Made by a program: the position numbers and the translations under genes. From the sequence record LR756502.1: a stretch of 64,000 nucleotides of DNA; one strand, 5' to 3'. The notes under the pieces are model-generated. The model searched no databases. It saw only the letters and a program-made list of their open reading frames with translations, and was not told the origin of the DNA. Below are positions 22,224 to 59,281 of this stretch, piece by piece (within the stretch, counting starts at the first letter, position 1; the number at the start of each line of letters is the position of its first letter).

Positions 22224-22666
22224 TTTATAATTAGGTTGTCTTGGTTTTTAAATATAAGTTTTATTGAAATAAATACTATTGTCCAGATATCATTTGAGTT
22301 GGGAATAAACCCATCTTTGTAAGTGAAGTGGTTGTTTGCTGATGAGTATAGTTTAATATCTCCTAGTATAAATCTATCATTTAAATACTCCATCATTCTT
22401 TCTATATCTGGTCTTGCCTCTACCCATTTAAACTTCAATGATCCTGTATCAAAAGGACTTGGGTGGAAACTAAGACGTGGTTGTGGTGAGTCTCTTTTAT
22501 CAATAGTTATCTCTATACCCATAGGGTCATGTATTTTACCTATCAATACTTGATAGTCATCATCGAGTAGATTAGCTAATAGTTCTTTTATTTCATTTTG
22601 TAGATCACCAAACCAAATAAAGGGATTACCCTCTTCAAATATTTTATATTTCTTTAGGTATTTCAT
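22220..22666 (-). CDS. N-tagged DILxDLxDxG-family protein (start revised to 22666)
   Basis: MKYLKKYKIFEE; IKELLANLLDDDY...FKWVEARPDIERMMEYL. Confidence 0.7.
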   Translation of the reverse strand: MKYLKKYKIFEEGNPFIWFGDLQNEIKELLANLLDDDYQVLIGKIHDPMGIEITIDKRDSPQPRLSFHPSPFDTGSLKFKWVEARPDIERMMEYLNDRFILGDIKLYSSANNHFTYKDGFIPNSNDIWTIVFISIKLIFKNQDNLIIK

Positions 22667-23577
22667 ATCTTTTTGATCCAATGAATATTGATCCAGGTAA
22701 TTGAATCATCACCTAATGACTTCTCTAAATCATTAAATTTAATACATCTGGCTGTATTAGCATCTTGTAATTCTAGTTTATCAATTACAAATCCATTCTC
22801 CAATAGAAATGAATTTAGGTGGTCTAAGGAATGATTAACATCTTTATAATTAATTCTAACATTTCTCCTATACACAACTGTATTATCCAATTCATCATAG
22901 TCATCATCCTCAAAGTCCTCTGGTAGATCACCATTATCTATGAGAACCTGAGACACCATAGGTATTGACTCTCCTAGTTTAGACATCCTTATGGAAACTT
23001 TACAAACACCACCATATGCTCTAGATCTAATGTTGCCACCATTCTCACCATTCCGTATACTAAGGTCAACTATTATTCCATTATCTCTCATATCAGATAT
23101 AATGTCTTCAGTTGTGTTTACAATCTCAAGATTCTTTTCTACGAATTCTTTAACCGAAATATCGTAGTTGCTCTCGAATAATTTATATGCTTTTAAATAT
23201 TTCATATTTTCTTCTATTAGATGCTTATTTACATCCCACTTAACCTTACTAACAAATTGCGCCTTGTATTGATAACCATCGAATCTATCAGATCCTTTCT
23301 TCTCATATCCAAGTGGTTCTAAATAAGCTGATAGTCTACTGATGATATCCTCTAAATCTTTCCTTATATAACCACTAGGTTTATTTATATAAACATAGAT
23401 GGATAACATACCTCGACAAGGCATTGTTTCAACTTCAGTGTGAAATCTATTCTTACTATCATCCCAATTATCATCTGATAATTCTAATAGTATATCTTTA
23501 ATAGTTTGTACTGTTTCTATAACACCATCTCTATCAAAATGATTCTCAAATATCTTATACTTCTTTAAGTGTTTCAT
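22663..23577 (-). CDS. Fusion of two N-tagged family proteins
   Basis: MKHLKKYKIFEN and an in-frame internal MKYLKAYKLFES (ATG at 23205). Confidence 0.75.
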   Translation of the reverse strand: MKHLKKYKIFENHFDRDGVIETVQTIKDILLELSDDNWDDSKNRFHTEVETMPCRGMLSIYVYINKPSGYIRKDLEDIISRLSAYLEPLGYEKKGSDRFDGYQYKAQFVSKVKWDVNKHLIEENMKYLKAYKLFESNYDISVKEFVEKNLEIVNTTEDIISDMRDNGIIVDLSIRNGENGGNIRSRAYGGVCKVSIRMSKLGESIPMVSQVLIDNGDLPEDFEDDDYDELDNTVVYRRNVRINYKDVNHSLDHLNSFLLENGFVIDKLELQDANTARCIKFNDLEKSLGDDSITWINIHWIKKI

Positions 23578-53848: not shown

Positions 53849-54154
53849 TTATCGTTTGTTGGTTGTTGTGTCGTTTGAAAGACGTGAATCAAAATTCACC
53901 TTTCCCTCATCTTGTATAGATTTATCAATTGATGTTCTTGAAATTCCATTAACTGATGCAATGTTTATCACATAGGTAATAAACATAATGGATGATACTG
54001 CGGTAATAATTAGGAACATCCTTTTTATTGGATTATAGGAATATCCTTTTAACATTGATTGGGTTACATTCCTCATTATAATTAAATAGGCCACCAAGGA
54101 TATAATGAGAAATAGTGAAAATCCTAGGATTGATGGTAGTAGTTGTCTTAACAT
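53849..54154 (-). CDS. 2-TM membrane protein, putative SPFH partner
   Basis: Two TM helices; immediately upstream of the SPFH gene. Confidence 0.65.
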   Translation of the reverse strand: MLRQLLPSILGFSLFLIISLVAYLIIMRNVTQSMLKGYSYNPIKRMFLIITAVSSIMFITYVINIASVNGISRTSIDKSIQDEGKVNFDSRLSNDTTTNKR

Positions 54155-54210
54155 AGTTTTTGGTTTTAGTGATAATTATTTATATTTGAATTTCCTTGGT
54201 TTGAAGTAAT

Positions 54211-54714
54211 TTAAAATACTACTTTTTCTGATATTGGGAATGTATTTATTAAATTAGTGAAGAATATCATGCTAGCATTATCGTTTATGAAGTACATTAC
54301 AAATACATATGATGGATTTCCGTTTTCATCCATTTGATCTTCATTAACATCGATTATAATCTTAATATTTTCATATTCTCTATCATTGTCTGTAAATTTA
54401 TACAATCTACCAGGTATATGCCTCCAATCACCTGTCTTCCTTATTTTTTTTAAATATCCAAGGAATACAAGGCTTTCCTCACCCTTATCTATCCCGATCA
54501 TTTCATGTTTGGTACTATCTCTAAAGGCGATTATATTACCTAACTTAAATGTATCTGTCATATCGATTATGGTATCTTTACCTCCTTCGGTTTTACCAGT
54601 CAACATGACGGTATTTATTTTAAATGAAATGGCATTTATTGATTTTGGAATAAACTGAGCAAGTACTGAATTTGCTACTAATATAAGCATTAGAGTTATT
54701 TTGAATGTTCTCAT
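54211..54714 (-). CDS. Exported beta-rich protein
   Basis: Signal MRTFKITLMLILVANSVLAQ. Confidence 0.6.
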   Translation of the reverse strand: MRTFKITLMLILVANSVLAQFIPKSINAISFKINTVMLTGKTEGGKDTIIDMTDTFKLGNIIAFRDSTKHEMIGIDKGEESLVFLGYLKKIRKTGDWRHIPGRLYKFTDNDREYENIKIIIDVNEDQMDENGNPSYVFVMYFINDNASMIFFTNLINTFPISEKVVF

Positions 54715-54732
54715 TTTTTATTATTATTTATA

Positions 54733-54740
54733 CAAATATA
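54733..54740 (-). promoter_or_regulatory. Bacteroidota-type TAnnTTTG promoter
   Basis: TATATTTG on the minus strand, upstream of 54714. Confidence 0.6.
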
Positions 54741-54781
54741 AGAACTATAATCCAATTATACTAATTTTATATATAATATTA

Positions 54782-55264
54782 ATGAGACATATAAAGTATT
54801 ATAGGGGTTTTGAGTCAACGTCATTAAAAGATGATATTTTGTTATATGTTCGTGATATACTTTCCGATATTTCTGATGATGGGTTTGGTATTGAGTTTAG
54901 TATTAAAAGTATGATGCCTACAAAGTATGTATCATCTAGACTAATGCCTAGTAGGGTTAAGGATTTTAGTGTTAGAATATCAGCTCCTATTAGTCCAAAA
55001 TTGAAATTTAGTAATGATTTTAAATTTGGTGATGTTAGTGGGTGTATAAATCATCTAATATCATTCATGGCAGATAATGGATATAAACAAGGTGGTATTT
55101 ACTCTGATTGGACTGGTGTCTGTCCAAGTGAGAAATCACATGCTTATAAAGTATTTACTGCAGACCGTGGTGATAAACTCATTTATCTGAATATTGATAG
55201 TCTTAATTCAGATAGTATAATATCAAACTATATAGAGATTTACTTTTATAATAAGGTGCTTTAG
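54782..55264 (+). CDS. N-tagged DILxDLxDxG-family protein (start revised to 54782)
   Basis: MRHIKYYRGFES; VRDILSDISDDGF...FKFGDVSGCINHLISFMADNGY. Confidence 0.7.
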   Translation: MRHIKYYRGFESTSLKDDILLYVRDILSDISDDGFGIEFSIKSMMPTKYVSSRLMPSRVKDFSVRISAPISPKLKFSNDFKFGDVSGCINHLISFMADNGYKQGGIYSDWTGVCPSEKSHAYKVFTADRGDKLIYLNIDSLNSDSIISNYIEIYFYNKVL

Positions 55265-55272
55265 TAAAAATA

Positions 55273-55680
55273 CTAAAACTTAATAATAAACCCTGTTGAA
55301 TACTGATTTGTTTTGTATCTTGATCCCATAATGAGGGTCCTTGTTGTTAATCTAAGATCTCGGGTTAGATAGAATTTAGCTCTAACATCATACTTAAATA
55401 TACTTAGGTATTCATCTGTTATATCATCATCATTAAAGGAATCAACATCATTTCCATCGATATTAAATTCATCCTCATTAATTCTTGTTGAGAAAGTTAT
55501 TTTTACGTTTCTAAGAACATAAGTATCTACATAATCATTTGATTGGTTAGTGTACCTAAGGTTAATATTATAAATTGAGGTAGAGTCCATTATATGATCA
55601 TATTTAGTGCTTAGTGATAGTTGAGCACTTGTTGATAATGATATTAACAACAATAGTAGTATTAATCTATATTTATACAT
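55273..55680 (-). CDS. Putative small outer-membrane beta-barrel protein
   Basis: Sec signal (LISLSTSAQ), alternating beta-strands, C-terminal YSTGFIIKF ending in Phe. Confidence 0.5.
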   Translation of the reverse strand: MYKYRLILLLLLISLSTSAQLSLSTKYDHIMDSTSIYNINLRYTNQSNDYVDTYVLRNVKITFSTRINEDEFNIDGNDVDSFNDDDITDEYLSIFKYDVRAKFYLTRDLRLTTRTLIMGSRYKTNQYSTGFIIKF

Positions 55681-55712
55681 TAATGGTTATATCTAATTAT
55701 ATAATAATTGTT

Positions 55713-56276
55713 TTATAAACAATTGAATTTTATAATCATTTGATTCAAGTCATCCAAGTGTTTATCTCCACCAATACTGTCTATCATCCTTGCTTTCTCA
55801 CTTATTATATAACCGAATTTGGATATTCTAACTCCATCTTTTTCATTAAATTCTGGTAGTTCATCATGGATAATCAATTGAACATCAACTGGACCAACTC
55901 TATAGGAGTCTGAGTAATCTGGATGAGCCCACCATCTTTGCTTCTGAACTGAAATTACTTTACTAACAAGGTCATATTGAATACCGAAGTGGTCACATAT
56001 TTTAAATGCCATTTCCTTGGTTACTATGAAGTCCCAATCTATCATCTTTCTATCTAACATCTCTTTGCCATTTAAGGTATAGCATCTTAATGCTCTTGAT
56101 CCTGTTAATACCCCGCCAATTTTAGTCACATATTTAATTAACTTACGATTAGGCATAAGTATTTGGAATTTCTTACTTTTTCTTTTACGAACATCAAATC
56201 CTACTTTGTGTTCGGTGGATAACATAGTTAGATTTATCTCTCTCACCCAAGATTTTATTTCTCCTACTCTATTCAT
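55713..56276 (-). CDS. Pol-beta-superfamily nucleotidyltransferase-like protein (start revised to 56276)
   Basis: VLTGSRAL...IDWDFIV...VDVQL: GS plus DxD plus a third Asp. Confidence 0.6.
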   Translation of the reverse strand: MNRVGEIKSWVREINLTMLSTEHKVGFDVRKRKSKKFQILMPNRKLIKYVTKIGGVLTGSRALRCYTLNGKEMLDRKMIDWDFIVTKEMAFKICDHFGIQYDLVSKVISVQKQRWWAHPDYSDSYRVGPVDVQLIIHDELPEFNEKDGVRISKFGYIISEKARMIDSIGGDKHLDDLNQMIIKFNCL

Positions 56277-56290
56277 TTTAATATTTTTTC

Positions 56291-56298
56291 CAAAGATA
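56291..56298 (-). promoter_or_regulatory. Bacteroidota-type TAnnTTTG promoter
   Basis: TATCTTTG on the minus strand, 15 nt upstream of the ATG at 56276. Confidence 0.6.
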
Positions 56299-56355
56299 CG
56301 GAATTTTCTTAAGATGTTAAATCTAATATATAGATAATCAAAATAAATAAAAAAC

Positions 56356-56658
56356 ATGAAACAATCAAGTTGGTTTAAAACGGAAGTGGACTTTGAAAGT
56401 TCTTTCAAGTTCTGGTTCGCACTTATGTGGCAAAATTCATATATTCAACTTTTCTCTGTTGGATTCATCTTATTACTTATGGAGTTAATAAAATTTGGAT
56501 GGGTATTGGATACTGTATCTGAAAATTTCTCATATGGTGTTTTTGGTGGTATCTTCACACTATTAGGAATGGTTATACCACTTGCGGTTACTTCAGTAAT
56601 TGGGTATAAGGGATTTTATCAATTTTGGAAAGATATAAAATTTGGAAAAACTAGATAA
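56356..56658 (+). CDS. 2-TM membrane protein
   Basis: Two hydrophobic helices; TAATATATA at 56324-56332. Confidence 0.65.
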   Translation: MKQSSWFKTEVDFESSFKFWFALMWQNSYIQLFSVGFILLLMELIKFGWVLDTVSENFSYGVFGGIFTLLGMVIPLAVTSVIGYKGFYQFWKDIKFGKTR

Positions 56659-57272
56659 TGAGAAATATTAAATCATATAAAGACTTCGCTAATGAGGAAG
56701 TAAACTGGAGAAAAGGAATGGCAACCGCTGCTCTAGGCGCATCACTTGCTATGTCATCCCCATTGATTGCAAACGGTAATGAAATTATTGATAAGATTGA
56801 AAATGTGTCAAGTAAATCAAAGAACTCAAATGATGATATGTTGAATAACATATTGGGTGAGATACATTCAAATATTAAAAGTACTGATAGTGCTAAGTAT
56901 ATTGAGTTATTTGATAAGTTATCATCACATCTATCCAAAGAGTATGGTTATGAGATAATTGCTAGGGATATTCCTAAGTTGGATAAAGAGACTATGTCTG
57001 ATATGAGCTTAGCTGAGTTAATGGGTTGGTTGGGTTCTATTTGTTTAGCTATATGTGGTGTCCCACAAGCTTGGATGTCCTATAAGGATAAACATTCTGA
57101 AGGAATTTCTTGGGCCTTTATTCTATTATGGGCTTTTGGTGAAGCATTTGCTTTGGCTTATGTGTATAATAAGTTGGATTTGCCTTTAGTTATGAACTAT
57201 CTAACTAATATTTTGATTGTTGCTATTATACTTTATTATAAGATAAATCCAGGCAAGAAGTCGGATTTATAA
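56658..57272 (+). CDS. N-tagged PQ-loop (SemiSWEET-like) membrane protein
   Basis: MRNIKSYKDFANEE; C-terminal GWLGSICLAICGVPQAWMSYKDKHSEGISWAFILLW... 3-TM PQ-loop unit. Confidence 0.8.
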   Translation: MRNIKSYKDFANEEVNWRKGMATAALGASLAMSSPLIANGNEIIDKIENVSSKSKNSNDDMLNNILGEIHSNIKSTDSAKYIELFDKLSSHLSKEYGYEIIARDIPKLDKETMSDMSLAELMGWLGSICLAICGVPQAWMSYKDKHSEGISWAFILLWAFGEAFALAYVYNKLDLPLVMNYLTNILIVAIILYYKINPGKKSDL

Positions 57273-57716
57273 AGTATGTCTTGGTATCTGGTATTTTAGA
57301 TATGATATCAACATTCTAATTTCTTTTTCACTTAAAATCTTATTAAATGCCATCATTCTTGGTGCTTTGGTATCCCATTCTTTTAGAAGAGATAGTGTAT
57401 ATTTGTCCTTTTCTTTTTCTAAAATATTTATATCCTCAATTATATTATACATTTTACCAAATCCTATTCTTGTTGACAATTTAGGCCCAGCTAAATCTCT
57501 TGTAAAGGAGTGACATGCTGCACAATTTCTTCTATAAATAACTTTACCCGATTCGATCCAATCTTCAGCATCACTAACAAACATTGTATCGATCTCCTTA
57601 ATAATAGATGATGTATCTTTTTGTGAACTAATTACTACTGGTGTTTTATTTGAATTTGAAGTACATTGTCCTATTAATAGGACTGCTAATATACCAAGTA
57701 TAAGTGTCTGTTTCAT
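57267..57716 (-). CDS. Class I cytochrome c, exported or lipid-anchored
   Basis: GKVIYRRNCAACH...GPKL...RMMAF...LSEKEIRMLISY; hydrophobic leader with Cys. Confidence 0.85.
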   Translation of the reverse strand: MKQTLILGILAVLLIGQCTSNSNKTPVVISSQKDTSSIIKEIDTMFVSDAEDWIESGKVIYRRNCAACHSFTRDLAGPKLSTRIGFGKMYNIIEDINILEKEKDKYTLSLLKEWDTKAPRMMAFNKILSEKEIRMLISYLKYQIPRHTL

Positions 57717-57717
57717 A

Positions 57718-58110
57718 TTAATATACTCTTACTTTTATACATTGTTGTGAGTTTGGTGATAATGTACCGGTCGCTATATTACCAACCGCGTCAATAACCT
57801 CCCAATCTATGCTTGATCCGCTGAAAAATTGATATTCTATACATCCACCTGCTGAGCAATTACCTGGTCCATATGGATAGTATGATGTTATGTTTCCGTA
57901 TAATGTGCCATTTATATAAATGGTTAGTGGTGGAAAGTTAGCTGGAGAGCTAACATAAAATATAGCTGTGGAGAATTGACATGAACCATCATTTTTATCT
58001 GCTTGATAATCATAGTTTATTGCTCTTGTGTCGGTACATCCCCTTTTATTATTACACCCACCGATTAATATGATTGTAAATAGGAATATTAAATTGAATA
58101 TTTTTTTCAT
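57718..58110 (-). CDS. Lipoprotein with a GCTD...DGSC module
   Basis: Lipobox LIGGC; GCTDTRAINYDYQADKNDGSC, typical of Bacteroidota surface proteins. Confidence 0.7.
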   Translation of the reverse strand: MKKIFNLIFLFTIILIGGCNNKRGCTDTRAINYDYQADKNDGSCQFSTAIFYVSSPANFPPLTIYINGTLYGNITSYYPYGPGNCSAGGCIEYQFFSGSSIDWEVIDAVGNIATGTLSPNSQQCIKVRVY

Positions 58111-58606: not shown

Positions 58607-59281
58607 TTATTTAGTTTTTATTAAAATTTCATCAACCATTCCATAGGCCTTAGCCTCTTCTGCTGTCATCCAATAATCTCTATCACTATCTGCCCAAACT
58701 TTATCATATGTTTGTCCACTGTGCTCGGCGATAATGTCATATAATTCCTTTTTTAATTTTTGAATTTCGCGAGCGGTTATTTCAATATCTGTTGCTTGTC
58801 CACTAGCTCCACCAAGTGGTTGGTGAATCATTACTCGCGAATGTTTAAGTGCTGCTCTTTTTCCTTTAGTTCCAGCACACATTAAAACAGCTCCCATTGA
58901 CGCAGCCATACCTGTGCATATAGTTGCAACATCTGGTGTTATGTATTGCATAGTATCGTAGATACCAAGTCCAGCATAAACTGAACCACCTGGGCTATTT
59001 AAATATATTTGAATATCTTTTTTAGCATCAACAGATTGTAGGAATAATAGTTGTGCTTGGATAATGTTTGCTACTTGGTCGTCAATTCCGGTCCCTAGGA
59101 AAATAACTCTATCCATCATTAGTCTAGAGAATACATCCATCTGAGTTATATTCAACTGGCGTTCCTCGATGATGTAAGGTGTTACATTTGAAATGTTGTG
59201 TTTTGTGTATGAGTCAAAGGTATTTCCGTTGATACCTTTATGCTTTGTGGCATACTTTCTAAATTCATTGTTATCGAACAT
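58607..59281 (-). CDS. clpP: ATP-dependent Clp protease proteolytic subunit (Bacteroidota-type)
   Basis: TPYIIEERQLN..MDVFSRLMMDR, NSPGGSV, GMAASMG (Ser), MIHQP (His) and DRDYWM (Asp). Confidence 0.97.
   Translation of the reverse strand: MFDNNEFRKYATKHKGINGNTFDSYTKHNISNVTPYIIEERQLNITQMDVFSRLMMDRVIFLGTGIDDQVANIIQAQLLFLQSVDAKKDIQIYLNSPGGSVYAGLGIYDTMQYITPDVATICTGMAASMGAVLMCAGTKGKRAALKHSRVMIHQPLGGASGQATDIEITAREIQKLKKELYDIIAEHSGQTYDKVWADSDRDYWMTAEEAKAYGMVDEILIKTK

What the first reader, a model, noticed from the sequence alone, without database searches (positions are those of the whole stretch)
56658..57272. PQ-loop/SemiSWEET-like transporter carrying the N-terminal packaging tag
Seen: tag MRNIKSYKDFANEE, a hydrophobic WRKGMATAALGASLAMS segment, a soluble linker, then a 3-TM PQ-loop unit. 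Established: SemiSWEET/PQ-loop 3-TM units dimerise into solute transporters. Inference: if the tag means encapsidation, a membrane transporter would be delivered from the virion, which is very unusual. Alternatively the tag has a broader targeting role than packaging, so this gene is a key test of the model.
Basis: partly seen in the sequence, partly recalled or inferred. Interest (0 to 1): 0.68.

Follow-up and report, generated by a model that had tools for sequence, protein, structure and literature searches.

The report
Megaphage SemiSWEET-like transporter with shared leader
A 642-kb freshwater "megaphage" encodes a conserved inner-membrane SemiSWEET/PQ-loop-type protein whose shared N-terminal motif sits in front of a secretion signal peptide. 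This protein is therefore almost certainly put into the host membrane rather than packed into the virus particle, so the motif cannot simply mean "packaging".

Summary
ORF 56658-57272(+) encodes 204 aa and is a PQ-loop protein (Pfam E=4.7e-12). A profile of its family matches solved SemiSWEETs across all three TM helices (E=1.7e-7). It is the only PQ-loop gene in the genome (LR756502.1, 642,428 bp).

It has 343 full-length homologues, several on contigs of 385-816 kb. In the 49 full-length homologues aligned, the PQ unit is the most conserved part (0.89) and the motif is also conserved (0.70).

The motif is real. About 87 of 923 ORFs carry it, and this N-terminus ranks 66th of 923.

New point: the "hydrophobic segment" is a Sec signal peptide. 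In 104 of 120 homologues it ends small-x-small followed by Gln, the Bacteroidetes Q-rule. The predicted topology is motif in the cytoplasm, an ~80-aa periplasmic helical domain, then a 3-TM unit running N-out to C-in.

At least three other ORFs share the motif-NEE-hydrophobic leader, and three more look similar.

For the soluble tagged proteins the phage T4 capsid-targeting analogy remains good: hydrophobic residues at positions 4 and 7, [ILVM]-x-E at 9-11 in 41 of 87, and a gp21-type head protease in the genome.

The SemiSWEET sugar-binding residues are replaced, and a glutamate inside TM2 is invariant, so the substrate is probably not a sugar.

The parts
56658..57272 (+). Whole CDS (204 aa plus stop): leader motif, signal peptide, periplasmic helical domain, 3-TM PQ-loop unit
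56658..56699 (+). Residues 1-14: shared N-terminal motif, sub-type M-[KR]-x-[IL]-K-x-Y-x-x-F-x-N-E-E. Y7 is found in 49/49 homologues, N12 in 47/48 and E13 in 48/48
56700..56777 (+). Residues 15-40: the rest of the leader. Basic W-R-K, a 12-13-aa A/G/L-rich h-region, a Pro-containing c-region, and A-x-G before N41. Homologues have small-x-small followed by Gln. Predicted Sec/SPase I signal peptide, or less likely an uncleaved signal anchor
56778..57011 (+). Residues 41-118: conserved helical domain, predicted periplasmic (near-invariant D59, L62, I65, L66, I69, L84, H91, Y96). No known family
57012..57251 (+). Residues 119-198: single PQ-loop / SemiSWEET-type three-helix unit with an invariant P136-Q137 hinge and invariant E162, N180, Y181 and N184
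57018..57080 (+). TM1 (about residues 121-141, out to in), containing the PQ motif
57105..57167 (+). TM2 (about residues 150-170, in to out) with invariant W158, G161 and E162. A165 occupies the position of the SemiSWEET substrate-binding Trp
57180..57242 (+). TM3 (about residues 175-195, out to in). Y181 occupies the position of the SemiSWEET substrate-binding Asn; N180 and N184 are invariant
56356..56658 (+). Upstream 100-aa membrane protein, translationally coupled by a 1-nt stop/start overlap. It is conserved next to the PQ-loop gene only in the closest clade (58% identity) and may be a partner

Best explanation
The gene encodes an inner-membrane protein that the megaphage makes in the infected cell, which is most likely a Bacteroidota host. 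Residues 1-40 are a composite leader. The lineage-wide N-terminal motif (1-14, ending NEE-[IVL]) forms an unusually long cytoplasmic n-region. It is followed by a basic patch, an A/G-rich h-region and a signal-peptidase-I site. The leader drives the ~80-aa helical domain (41-118) across the membrane. The three PQ-loop helices then insert N-out/C-in, as in SemiSWEETs, and by analogy would pair as a homodimer to form a solute pathway. The SemiSWEET sugar-binding triad is replaced and a glutamate inside TM2 is invariant, so the substrate is probably not a neutral sugar; a cationic or proton-coupled solute is more likely (inference). In this protein the motif is therefore not an encapsidation signal for the mature protein. 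It is a cytoplasmic recognition element shared with about 80 soluble proteins and is lost if the leader is cleaved. Shown: PQ-loop membership, the SemiSWEET-type 3-TM unit, conservation of every module, signal-peptide features, and recurrence of the motif. Inferred: cleavage, topology, dimerisation, transport, and what the motif binds.
For: PQ-loop family: Pfam E=4.7e-12. The family profile matches SemiSWEET structures 4qnc, 5uhq, 5uhs, 9kax and 4rng without gaps over residues 120-203, with E from 1.7e-7 to 5e-4. The top seven Foldseek hits of the AF2 model are all SemiSWEETs, with TM-score per target 0.59-0.74. NCBIfam SemiSWEET_2 gives E=1e-8. Conservation: 343 homologues, several on contigs of 385-816 kb. 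In 49 full-length homologues aligned, the PQ unit scores 0.89 mean majority identity, the motif 0.70, the linker 0.60 and the signal region 0.57. Signal peptide: a 12-13-aa h-core follows W/F-R/K-K. 104 of 120 homologues then have small-x-small followed by Gln (VSA|Q, VAA|Q, VTA|Q, AKG|Q). This is the Bacteroidetes Q-rule (PMC5837995). Untagged secreted proteins of the same phage obey the rule too, for example 54211(-) and 55273(-). Topology: K/R counts are 5 in the N-tail, 2 in loop 1 and 3 in the C-tail, against 1 in loop 2 (counted from the sequence). This matches the SemiSWEET N-out/C-in orientation, which requires the linker to be translocated. The leader is modular. ORFs at genome 95990, 544849 and 580926 (the last with a lipobox) carry the same motif-NEE-[IV]-hydrophobic arrangement, and 79261, 400000 and 486695 are similar.
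Against: No signal-peptide predictor could be run and cleavage is not demonstrated. The window copy itself has A-N-G followed by N, not Gln. The h-region is fairly conserved and rich in small-xxx-small motifs, which could instead mark a functional, uncleaved TM0 helix. The AF2 models are low-confidence (pLDDT 52-54). The dimer test could not be run. No substrate can be named, because gene neighbourhood is not conserved across clades. Strong conservation of the motif (Y7, N12, E13) shows that it does something here, and that function is unexplained.
Confidence: 0.6

Rival explanations
1. The motif is a T4-like capsid-targeting propeptide on this protein as well, so the PQ-loop protein, perhaps as an unprocessed precursor, is loaded into proheads, ejected with the DNA and inserted into the next host's membrane.
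For: The motif resembles the T4 capsid-targeting sequence (CTS). It is a 10-11-aa N-terminal peptide with hydrophobic residues at positions 4 and 7, the targeting positions in T4 (PMC9026906). [ILVM]-x-E, the gp21 cleavage motif, lies at positions 9-11 in 41 of 87 tagged ORFs. The genome has a gp21-type head maturation protease (phrog_207 E=6e-28; Pfam S77 22.7 bits, below the 27-bit cut-off). Tagged proteins share nothing except the motif, as T4 internal proteins do (PMC3012670). Two tagged genes lie directly upstream of the portal gene.
Against: This protein has a signal peptide plus three strongly hydrophobic helices, so it should be captured by the Sec/SRP pathway. It lacks [IL]-x-E at positions 9-11. 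It is under strong purifying selection across the clade, unlike fast-changing internal proteins. To my knowledge no tailed phage is known to package a classical polytopic membrane protein.
Confidence: 0.07
2. The motif is a cytoplasmic degradation or adaptor signal for the phage's own Clp system (or the host's FtsH). It would give timed turnover of about 9% of phage proteins, including membrane proteins with an N-terminal tail of about 19 aa in the cytoplasm.
For: The phage encodes a bona fide ClpP 1.3 kb away (NCBIfam equivalog, 406 bits against a cut-off of 361). It also encodes a 719-aa Clp-type AAA+ ATPase (PF07724 E=8e-70). The motif always sits at the extreme N-terminus and would be cytoplasmic on both soluble and membrane carriers.
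Against: There is no sequence match to any known degron, and the evidence is purely positional. If the leader is cleaved, the mature transporter escapes such control. The [ILVM]-x-E regularity is better explained by a Glu-specific head protease.
Confidence: 0.12
3. The protein is not a transporter. It would be a membrane effector such as a holin/antiholin-like lysis protein or a superinfection-exclusion protein that merely uses a three-helix scaffold.
For: It is a small phage membrane protein. There is a weak PHROG holin hit (phrog_13682, E=0.36). It is coupled to another small membrane protein and lies in a cluster of envelope proteins.
Against: The match to SemiSWEETs is full-length. The PQ hinge and the S151, Y168, D174 and P176 equivalents of SemiSWEET gate residues are invariant, as are the polar intramembrane residues E162, N180, Y181 and N184. 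This pattern is typical of a ligand pathway. No endolysin was found next to the gene.
Confidence: 0.1
4. The hydrophobic segment is an uncleaved signal anchor (TM0), or a Tat-type signal. The mature protein would then have four TM helices and keep the motif on its cytoplasmic N-terminus. There it could tether or recruit other tagged-protein machinery, for example proheads assembling on the membrane.
For: The h-region is unusually conserved and A/G-rich, with small-xxx-small spacing. The n-region is long. T4 and SPN3US proheads assemble on the inner membrane and are released by proteolysis (PMC9026906).
Against: The -3/-1 plus Gln(+1) site is kept in 104 of 120 homologues. The h-core is only 12-13 aa long. 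Twin arginine is present in only 6 of 49 homologues, with R-K or K-S in the rest.
Confidence: 0.15

Closest known systems
Bacterial SemiSWEETs (e.g. Leptospira biflexa 4QNC, Thermodesulfovibrio 4RNG, E. coli 4X5M)
   Same: A single three-helix PQ-loop/MtN3 unit of about 85 aa. The profile alignment is gapless. The PQ hinge and the equivalents of S34, Y51, D57 and P59 are kept. The charge distribution agrees with the N-out/C-in orientation.
   Different: It carries a 118-aa N-terminal extension made of motif, signal peptide and periplasmic domain. The substrate residues T13/W48/N64 are replaced by L130/A165/Y181, and a Glu in TM2 is invariant. NCBIfam SemiSWEET_2 scores 35 bits against a cut-off of 80. 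It is encoded by a phage.
Eukaryotic PQ-loop transporters (cystinosin, PQLC2/LAAT-1)
   Same: Same Pfam family. There are weak profile hits to cystinosin (E about 0.02). Cystinosin also has a signal peptide and a luminal N-terminal domain (my knowledge). In three distant-clade contigs a cysteine-synthase-like gene lies two genes upstream.
   Different: Those proteins have seven TM helices with two PQ repeats. The cysteine-synthase link is absent from this genome.
Phage T4 capsid-targeting sequence of internal proteins, with gp21 L/I-x-E cleavage
   Same: A short N-terminal peptide shared by otherwise unrelated small proteins. Hydrophobic residues at positions 4 and 7. A Glu-ended [ILVM]-x-E in about half of the carriers. 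A gp21-type protease is present.
   Different: About 87 carriers here, against a handful in T4. This carrier and about six others continue into a signal peptide or TM segment, and this one lacks [IL]-x-E at positions 9-11. No virion data exist.
Conserved N-terminal extensions of signal peptides (ESPR of type V secretion; YSIRK-G/S signal peptides)
   Same: A conserved motif placed N-terminal to an otherwise ordinary signal peptide. This resemblance is from my knowledge and was not tested.
   Different: There is no sequence similarity. Here the same motif also heads about 80 proteins that have no signal peptide.
Stand-alone viral PQ-loop/COG4095 proteins (ESM Atlas clusters of 83-91 aa in which members with a taxon record are mostly viral, commonest Uroviricota)
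   Same: The nearest neighbours of residues 115-204 in language-model feature space, scoring 0.91-0.92. Phage-borne PQ-loop units are therefore recurrent.
   Different: Those proteins are bare 3-TM units without the leader and periplasmic domain.

Membership tests
Pfam PQ-loop (PF04193) | Score above the curated gathering threshold | tested here: met
   45.9 bits against 22, E=4.7e-12; 48.2 bits in the six-frame genome search
SemiSWEET | A single three-TM-helix bundle unit aligned over its whole length | tested here: met
   Gapless profile match of residues 120-203 to 4qnc residues 3-85, E=1.7e-7; three hydropathy peaks; Foldseek top 7 all SemiSWEET
SemiSWEET | Pro-Gln hinge in TM1 | tested here: met
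   P136 and Q137 are invariant in 53 sequences
SemiSWEET | Substrate-binding Trp (TM2), Asn (TM3) and Thr13 (PMC5972207) | tested here: not met
   The aligned positions are A165, Y181 and L130; N180 is adjacent and N184 is one turn away
SemiSWEET | NCBIfam SemiSWEET_2 curated cut-off | tested here: not met
   35.2 bits against a cut-off of 80
SemiSWEET | Homodimer forming the translocation pathway | not tested
SemiSWEET | Sugar transport activity | not testable with these tools
   Needs uptake or proteoliposome assays
Sec/SPase I signal peptide (Bacteroidetes Q-rule) | Basic n-region, 7-15-aa h-region, small residues at -3/-1, Gln at +1 | tested here: met
   104 of 120 homologues; rule from PMC5837995. 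The window copy has A-N-G followed by N, so -3/-1 are met but Gln is absent
Tat signal peptide | Twin-arginine motif | tested here: not met
   Positions 18-19 are R-K here; R-R occurs in 6 of 49 homologues
T4-type capsid-targeting propeptide | Extreme N-terminal ~10-aa peptide with hydrophobic residues at positions 4 and 7 | tested here: met
   I4 and Y7; PSSM rank 66 of 923; T4 rule from PMC9026906
T4-type capsid-targeting propeptide | L/I-x-E protease site closing the peptide | tested here: inconclusive
   Positions 9-11 are D-F-A. E13 is invariant, but its P3 residue varies (A/T/M/I/V)
T4-type capsid-targeting propeptide | gp21-family prohead protease in the genome | tested here: met
   Genome 225272-227371: phrog_207 E=6e-28. 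Pfam S77 scores 22.7 bits, below the 27-bit cut-off
T4-type capsid-targeting propeptide | Cargo physically present inside virions | not testable with these tools
   The phage is uncultured and no proteome exists. The signal peptide and three TM helices argue against it

The most novel reading that the evidence does not exclude
The shared motif is a true prohead-targeting propeptide used by about 9% of the megaphage's genes. The motif-NEE-signal-peptide leader would then be a dual-address device. Either envelope proteins, including this transporter, are packaged as precursors and exported in the next host after ejection. Or their cytoplasmic motif tethers assembling proheads to the inner membrane until a Glu-specific protease releases them.
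Probability: 0.1. Interest if true: 0.85.

Novelty: new variant of a known kind. Interest (0 to 1): 0.5.

Why it matters
Three reasons. First, it adds a conserved membrane transporter-type gene to the core of the largest known phages. Its architecture (signal peptide, periplasmic domain, SemiSWEET unit) was not found in the representative cellular genomes scanned, although that scan used only two peptide patterns. Second, it gives a concrete sequence-level test of what the N-terminal motif carried by about 87 genes means. Because the motif sits in front of export signals on several conserved envelope proteins, it cannot be a simple capsid address. Third, the Q-rule cleavage sites independently point to a Bacteroidota host for an uncultured 642-kb phage.

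Tried and rejected
- Structure prediction: two AF2 runs (24 and 53 sequences) gave only pLDDT 54 and 52. I used the model only for a Foldseek ranking, where all E-values were above 0.07.
- Domain-only word search: it found only 5 short fragments of the same family.
- GenBank phages: tblastn found no relative other than the record itself.
- ESM Atlas: nothing for the linker domain.
- RNA-level explanation of the motif: rejected. There is no conservation upstream of the ATG, and the position-4 codon varies in its first base (I/L/V), so the constraint is on the peptide.
- Recent paralogy as the explanation of the motif: rejected. A tagged protein finds no paralogue by tblastn, and 18 of 20 tagged proteins have no Pfam family.
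- Alternative genetic code: not needed. The standard code gives 92% coding.
- Guilt by association for the substrate: a cysteine-synthase-like neighbour occurs in three distant-clade contigs but is absent from this genome, so it remains only a weak lead.
- Expression: no RNA run holds the locus, and read laying was not used.
- Large profile search: not run, because the family scans did not leave the protein open.
- Literature: nothing found on phage PQ-loop proteins.

Full report
**Origin of the window.** The window is bases 1-64000 of LR756502.1, an unannotated 642,428-bp "uncultured phage". This is one of the >630-kb megaphages assembled from a French freshwater lake (PMC9723777). I rebuilt the whole record from 50-kb pieces. 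It has 31.5% G+C, no N, and the standard code gives about 92% coding with about 923 ORFs of at least 60 aa.

ORF 56658-57272(+) starts at the first ATG after a stop, overlaps the stop of the upstream gene by one base, and encodes 204 aa.
- Pfam PQ-loop scores 45.9 bits against a cut-off of 22 (E=4.7e-12) on residues 119-171.
- It is the only PQ-loop match in the 642-kb genome.
- Hydropathy shows three strong helices (about 121-141, 150-170, 175-195) and a weaker A/G-rich segment at 20-38.

**A conserved megaphage gene.** A word-based search found 343 full-length homologues (47-89% identity among the 120 listed). Several lie on contigs of 385, 598, 617 and 816 kb.
- Across 49 full-length homologues, mean majority identity is 0.89 for the PQ unit, 0.70 for residues 1-14, 0.60 for the linker and 0.57 for the hydrophobic region.
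- Y7, N12 and E13 of the motif are essentially invariant.
- A pattern-limited scan of 185,579 species-representative genomes found only two distant matches, both to the PQ unit alone (32-34% identity). The full architecture therefore looks phage-specific.
- GenBank phages contain no other copy.

**Fold and family.** A profile of the family matches solved SemiSWEETs (4qnc, 5uhq, 5uhs, 9kax, 4rng) without gaps over residues 120-203, with E from 1.7e-7 to 5e-4. Cystinosins come next at E about 0.02.
- The AF2 models were poor (pLDDT 52-54). Even so, the seven best Foldseek hits are all SemiSWEETs (TM-score per target 0.59-0.74, E above 0.07).
- NCBIfam SemiSWEET_2 matches at E=1e-8 but far below its cut-off (35 bits against 80).
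- I mapped the alignment onto residues described for LbSemiSWEET (PMC5972207). The PQ hinge (P136, Q137) and the equivalents of S34, Y51, D57 and P59 (S151, Y168, D174, P176) are invariant.
- The substrate triad T13/W48/N64 is replaced by L130/A165/Y181. E162, N180 and N184 are invariant polar residues inside the membrane.
- I therefore file it as a PQ-loop protein with a SemiSWEET-type unit, but not as a SemiSWEET sugar transporter. A non-sugar substrate, possibly cationic or proton-coupled, is my inference.

**The hydrophobic segment is a signal peptide.**
- After the motif come W/F-R/K-K, a 12-13-residue A/G/L core, and a Pro-containing stretch. In 104 of 120 homologues there is then a small-x-small site followed directly by Gln (VSA|Q, VAA|Q, VTA|Q, AKG|Q).
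- This is the layout of a Sec/SPase I signal peptide obeying the Bacteroidetes Q-rule (PMC5837995).
- The window copy has A-N-G followed by N, so the -3/-1 positions fit but Gln is absent.
- Ordinary, untagged secreted proteins of this phage show the same rule, for example 54211-54714(-) and 55273-55680(-). This also points to a Bacteroidota host.
- Lys/Arg counts are 5 in the N-tail, 2 in loop 1 and 3 in the C-tail, against 1 in loop 2. This gives the SemiSWEET N-out/C-in orientation, which requires the ~80-aa helical domain 41-118 to be translocated. That is the job of such a leader.
- A Tat signal is unlikely, since R-R occurs in only 6 of 49 homologues.
- An uncleaved anchor remains possible, because the h-region is rather conserved.

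**The motif.**
- A PSSM built from 20 core motifs (M-[KR]-x-[ILV]-[KR]-x-[YF]-x-[ILV]-[FY]-E) flags 87 of 923 ORFs above the 99.9th percentile of internal-Met controls. Fifty of them lie in the first 100 kb.
- This gene scores 8.3 bits, rank 66 of 923, and 2 of 2670 controls reach it.
- The constraint is on the peptide, not the RNA. There is no conservation upstream of the ATG, and I/L/V alternate through first-base changes.
- The carriers share nothing else. Eighteen of 20 have no Pfam family (the two that do are a SET domain and a weak Toprim), the nine tested gave no PHROG match, and a tagged protein finds no paralogue by tblastn.
- An exact back-translated version of the motif occurs in 30 IMG/VR stretches, including contigs of 248-476 kb. 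Related loci carry about 2 motifs per 10 kb.

**For and against "packaging tag".**
- For: the motif resembles the T4 capsid-targeting sequence. That is a 10-residue N-terminal peptide whose positions 4 and 7 target and whose positions 8 and 10 (I-x-E) are processed by gp21. It is the only thing conserved among diverse internal proteins (PMC9026906, PMC3012670).
- For: here positions 4 and 7 are hydrophobic, and 41 of 87 carriers have [ILVM]-x-E at positions 9-11.
- For: the genome has a gp21-type head maturation protease (phrog_207 E=6e-28; Pfam S77 weak) between the portal gene and a major-head-protein-like gene. Two tagged genes lie directly upstream of the portal.
- Against generality: this protein and at least three others (genome 95990, 544849, and 580926 with a lipobox), plus three similar ones (79261, 400000, 486695), continue from the motif through NEE-[IVLF] into a signal peptide or TM helix. 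Intermediate forms link the two classes.
- Against generality: proteins routed into or across the membrane cannot at the same time be soluble prohead cargo.
- My reading: the motif is a cytoplasmic recognition peptide, and for this gene it is part of a leader, not a virion address.
- Alternative: it is a degradation or adaptor signal. The phage has a genuine ClpP 1.3 kb away and a Clp-type ATPase, which keeps this open.

**Gene context.**
- The upstream 100-aa membrane protein is coupled and conserved only in the nearest clade.
- In three more distant contigs a cysteine-synthase-like gene lies two genes upstream and RecA lies downstream. This genome has no such enzyme.
- A 2OG-Fe(II) oxygenase follows the gene in two contigs.
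- Context therefore gives no firm substrate.
- In the window the gene lies in a cluster of envelope proteins, including a lipoprotein c-type cytochrome.

**Verdict.** This is a new architectural variant of a known transporter family. Its main value is as evidence that the lineage-wide N-terminal motif is not simply an encapsidation tag. No RNA data exist for the locus, and no paper on phage PQ-loop proteins was found.

Noticed in passing
whole window and genome; e.g. window 11122, 11739, 13051, 13991, 15618, 20622(-), 24005(-), 25135, 34154, 36113, 39909, 44127, 61390, 62259, 62549: About 87 of 923 ORFs (33 of 106 in the first 50 kb) begin with the motif M-[KR]-x-[ILV]-K-x-[YF]-x-x-[FY]. 41 of them have [ILVM]-x-E at positions 9-11. 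The carriers are mostly acidic orphan proteins with no similarity to each other beyond the motif, apart from a D-I-L-L-D-L-x-D-D-G-like acidic box in 13. The pattern resembles the hyperplastic internal-protein locus of phage T4, on a far larger scale.
   Followed up: partly
window 22663-23577 (-): One 304-aa ORF has a full motif at its N-terminus and a second full motif at an internal Met, about residue 125 (start at 23205). It is either two tagged units fused in one frame or two genes with the separating stop lost.
   Followed up: no
window 57267-57716 (-): A phage-encoded lipoprotein c-type cytochrome. It has a lipobox-like signal and a CxxCH motif. Pfam Cytochrome_CBB3 and Cytochrom_C give E about 1e-7, and NCBIfam SoxX gives a weak hit (E=1.5e-4). 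It is convergent with the PQ-loop gene and overlaps it by 6 nt. The next gene, 57718-58110(-), is another lipoprotein.
   Followed up: partly
window 53849-58110: A cluster of seven envelope-directed genes. The secreted proteins 54211-54714(-) and 55273-55680(-) have cleavage sites of the form VLA|Q and TSA|Q. About ten classical signal peptides across the genome follow this Bacteroidetes Q-rule, which supports a Bacteroidota host.
   Followed up: partly
window 58607-59281 (-); genome 441807-442331 (L050): A cellular-type ClpP (NCBIfam equivalog PRK14514, 406 bits against a cut-off of 361; not the head-maturation type). The same phage also has a 719-aa open frame with a Clp AAA_2 domain (E=8e-70). 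The phage may therefore run its own Clp proteolysis.
   Followed up: partly
genome 221232-229167 (L005:7232-15164): The head module: two tagged genes, then portal (phrog_213 E=4e-59), two small reverse-strand genes, a 699-aa head maturation protease (phrog_207 E=6e-28) and a major-head-protein-like gene (phrog_138 E=2e-23).
   Followed up: partly
genome 208299-208742 (L004:44299-44739): A tagged SET-domain protein (Pfam SET E=2.3e-11). Apart from the PQ-loop protein it is one of the very few tagged proteins with a recognisable domain. A related 617-kb contig has an untagged SET gene 3 kb from its PQ-loop gene (L018:8946-9242).
   Followed up: partly
L016:3285-4157, L017:1240-2112, L051:1814-2686: In the 222- and 232-aa clades of the family, a cysteine-synthase-like gene (NCBIfam cysKM E=8e-97, just under its cut-off) lies two genes upstream of the PQ-loop gene on the same strand, and RecA lies downstream. 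LR756502.1 has no such PLP-dependent (Pfam PALP family) gene anywhere. This is a possible but weak hint towards cysteine/cystine-related transport.
   Followed up: partly
window 56651-56938 (-): A 95-aa antisense ORF overlaps the 5' half of the PQ-loop gene. It has no support and is most likely spurious.
   Followed up: no
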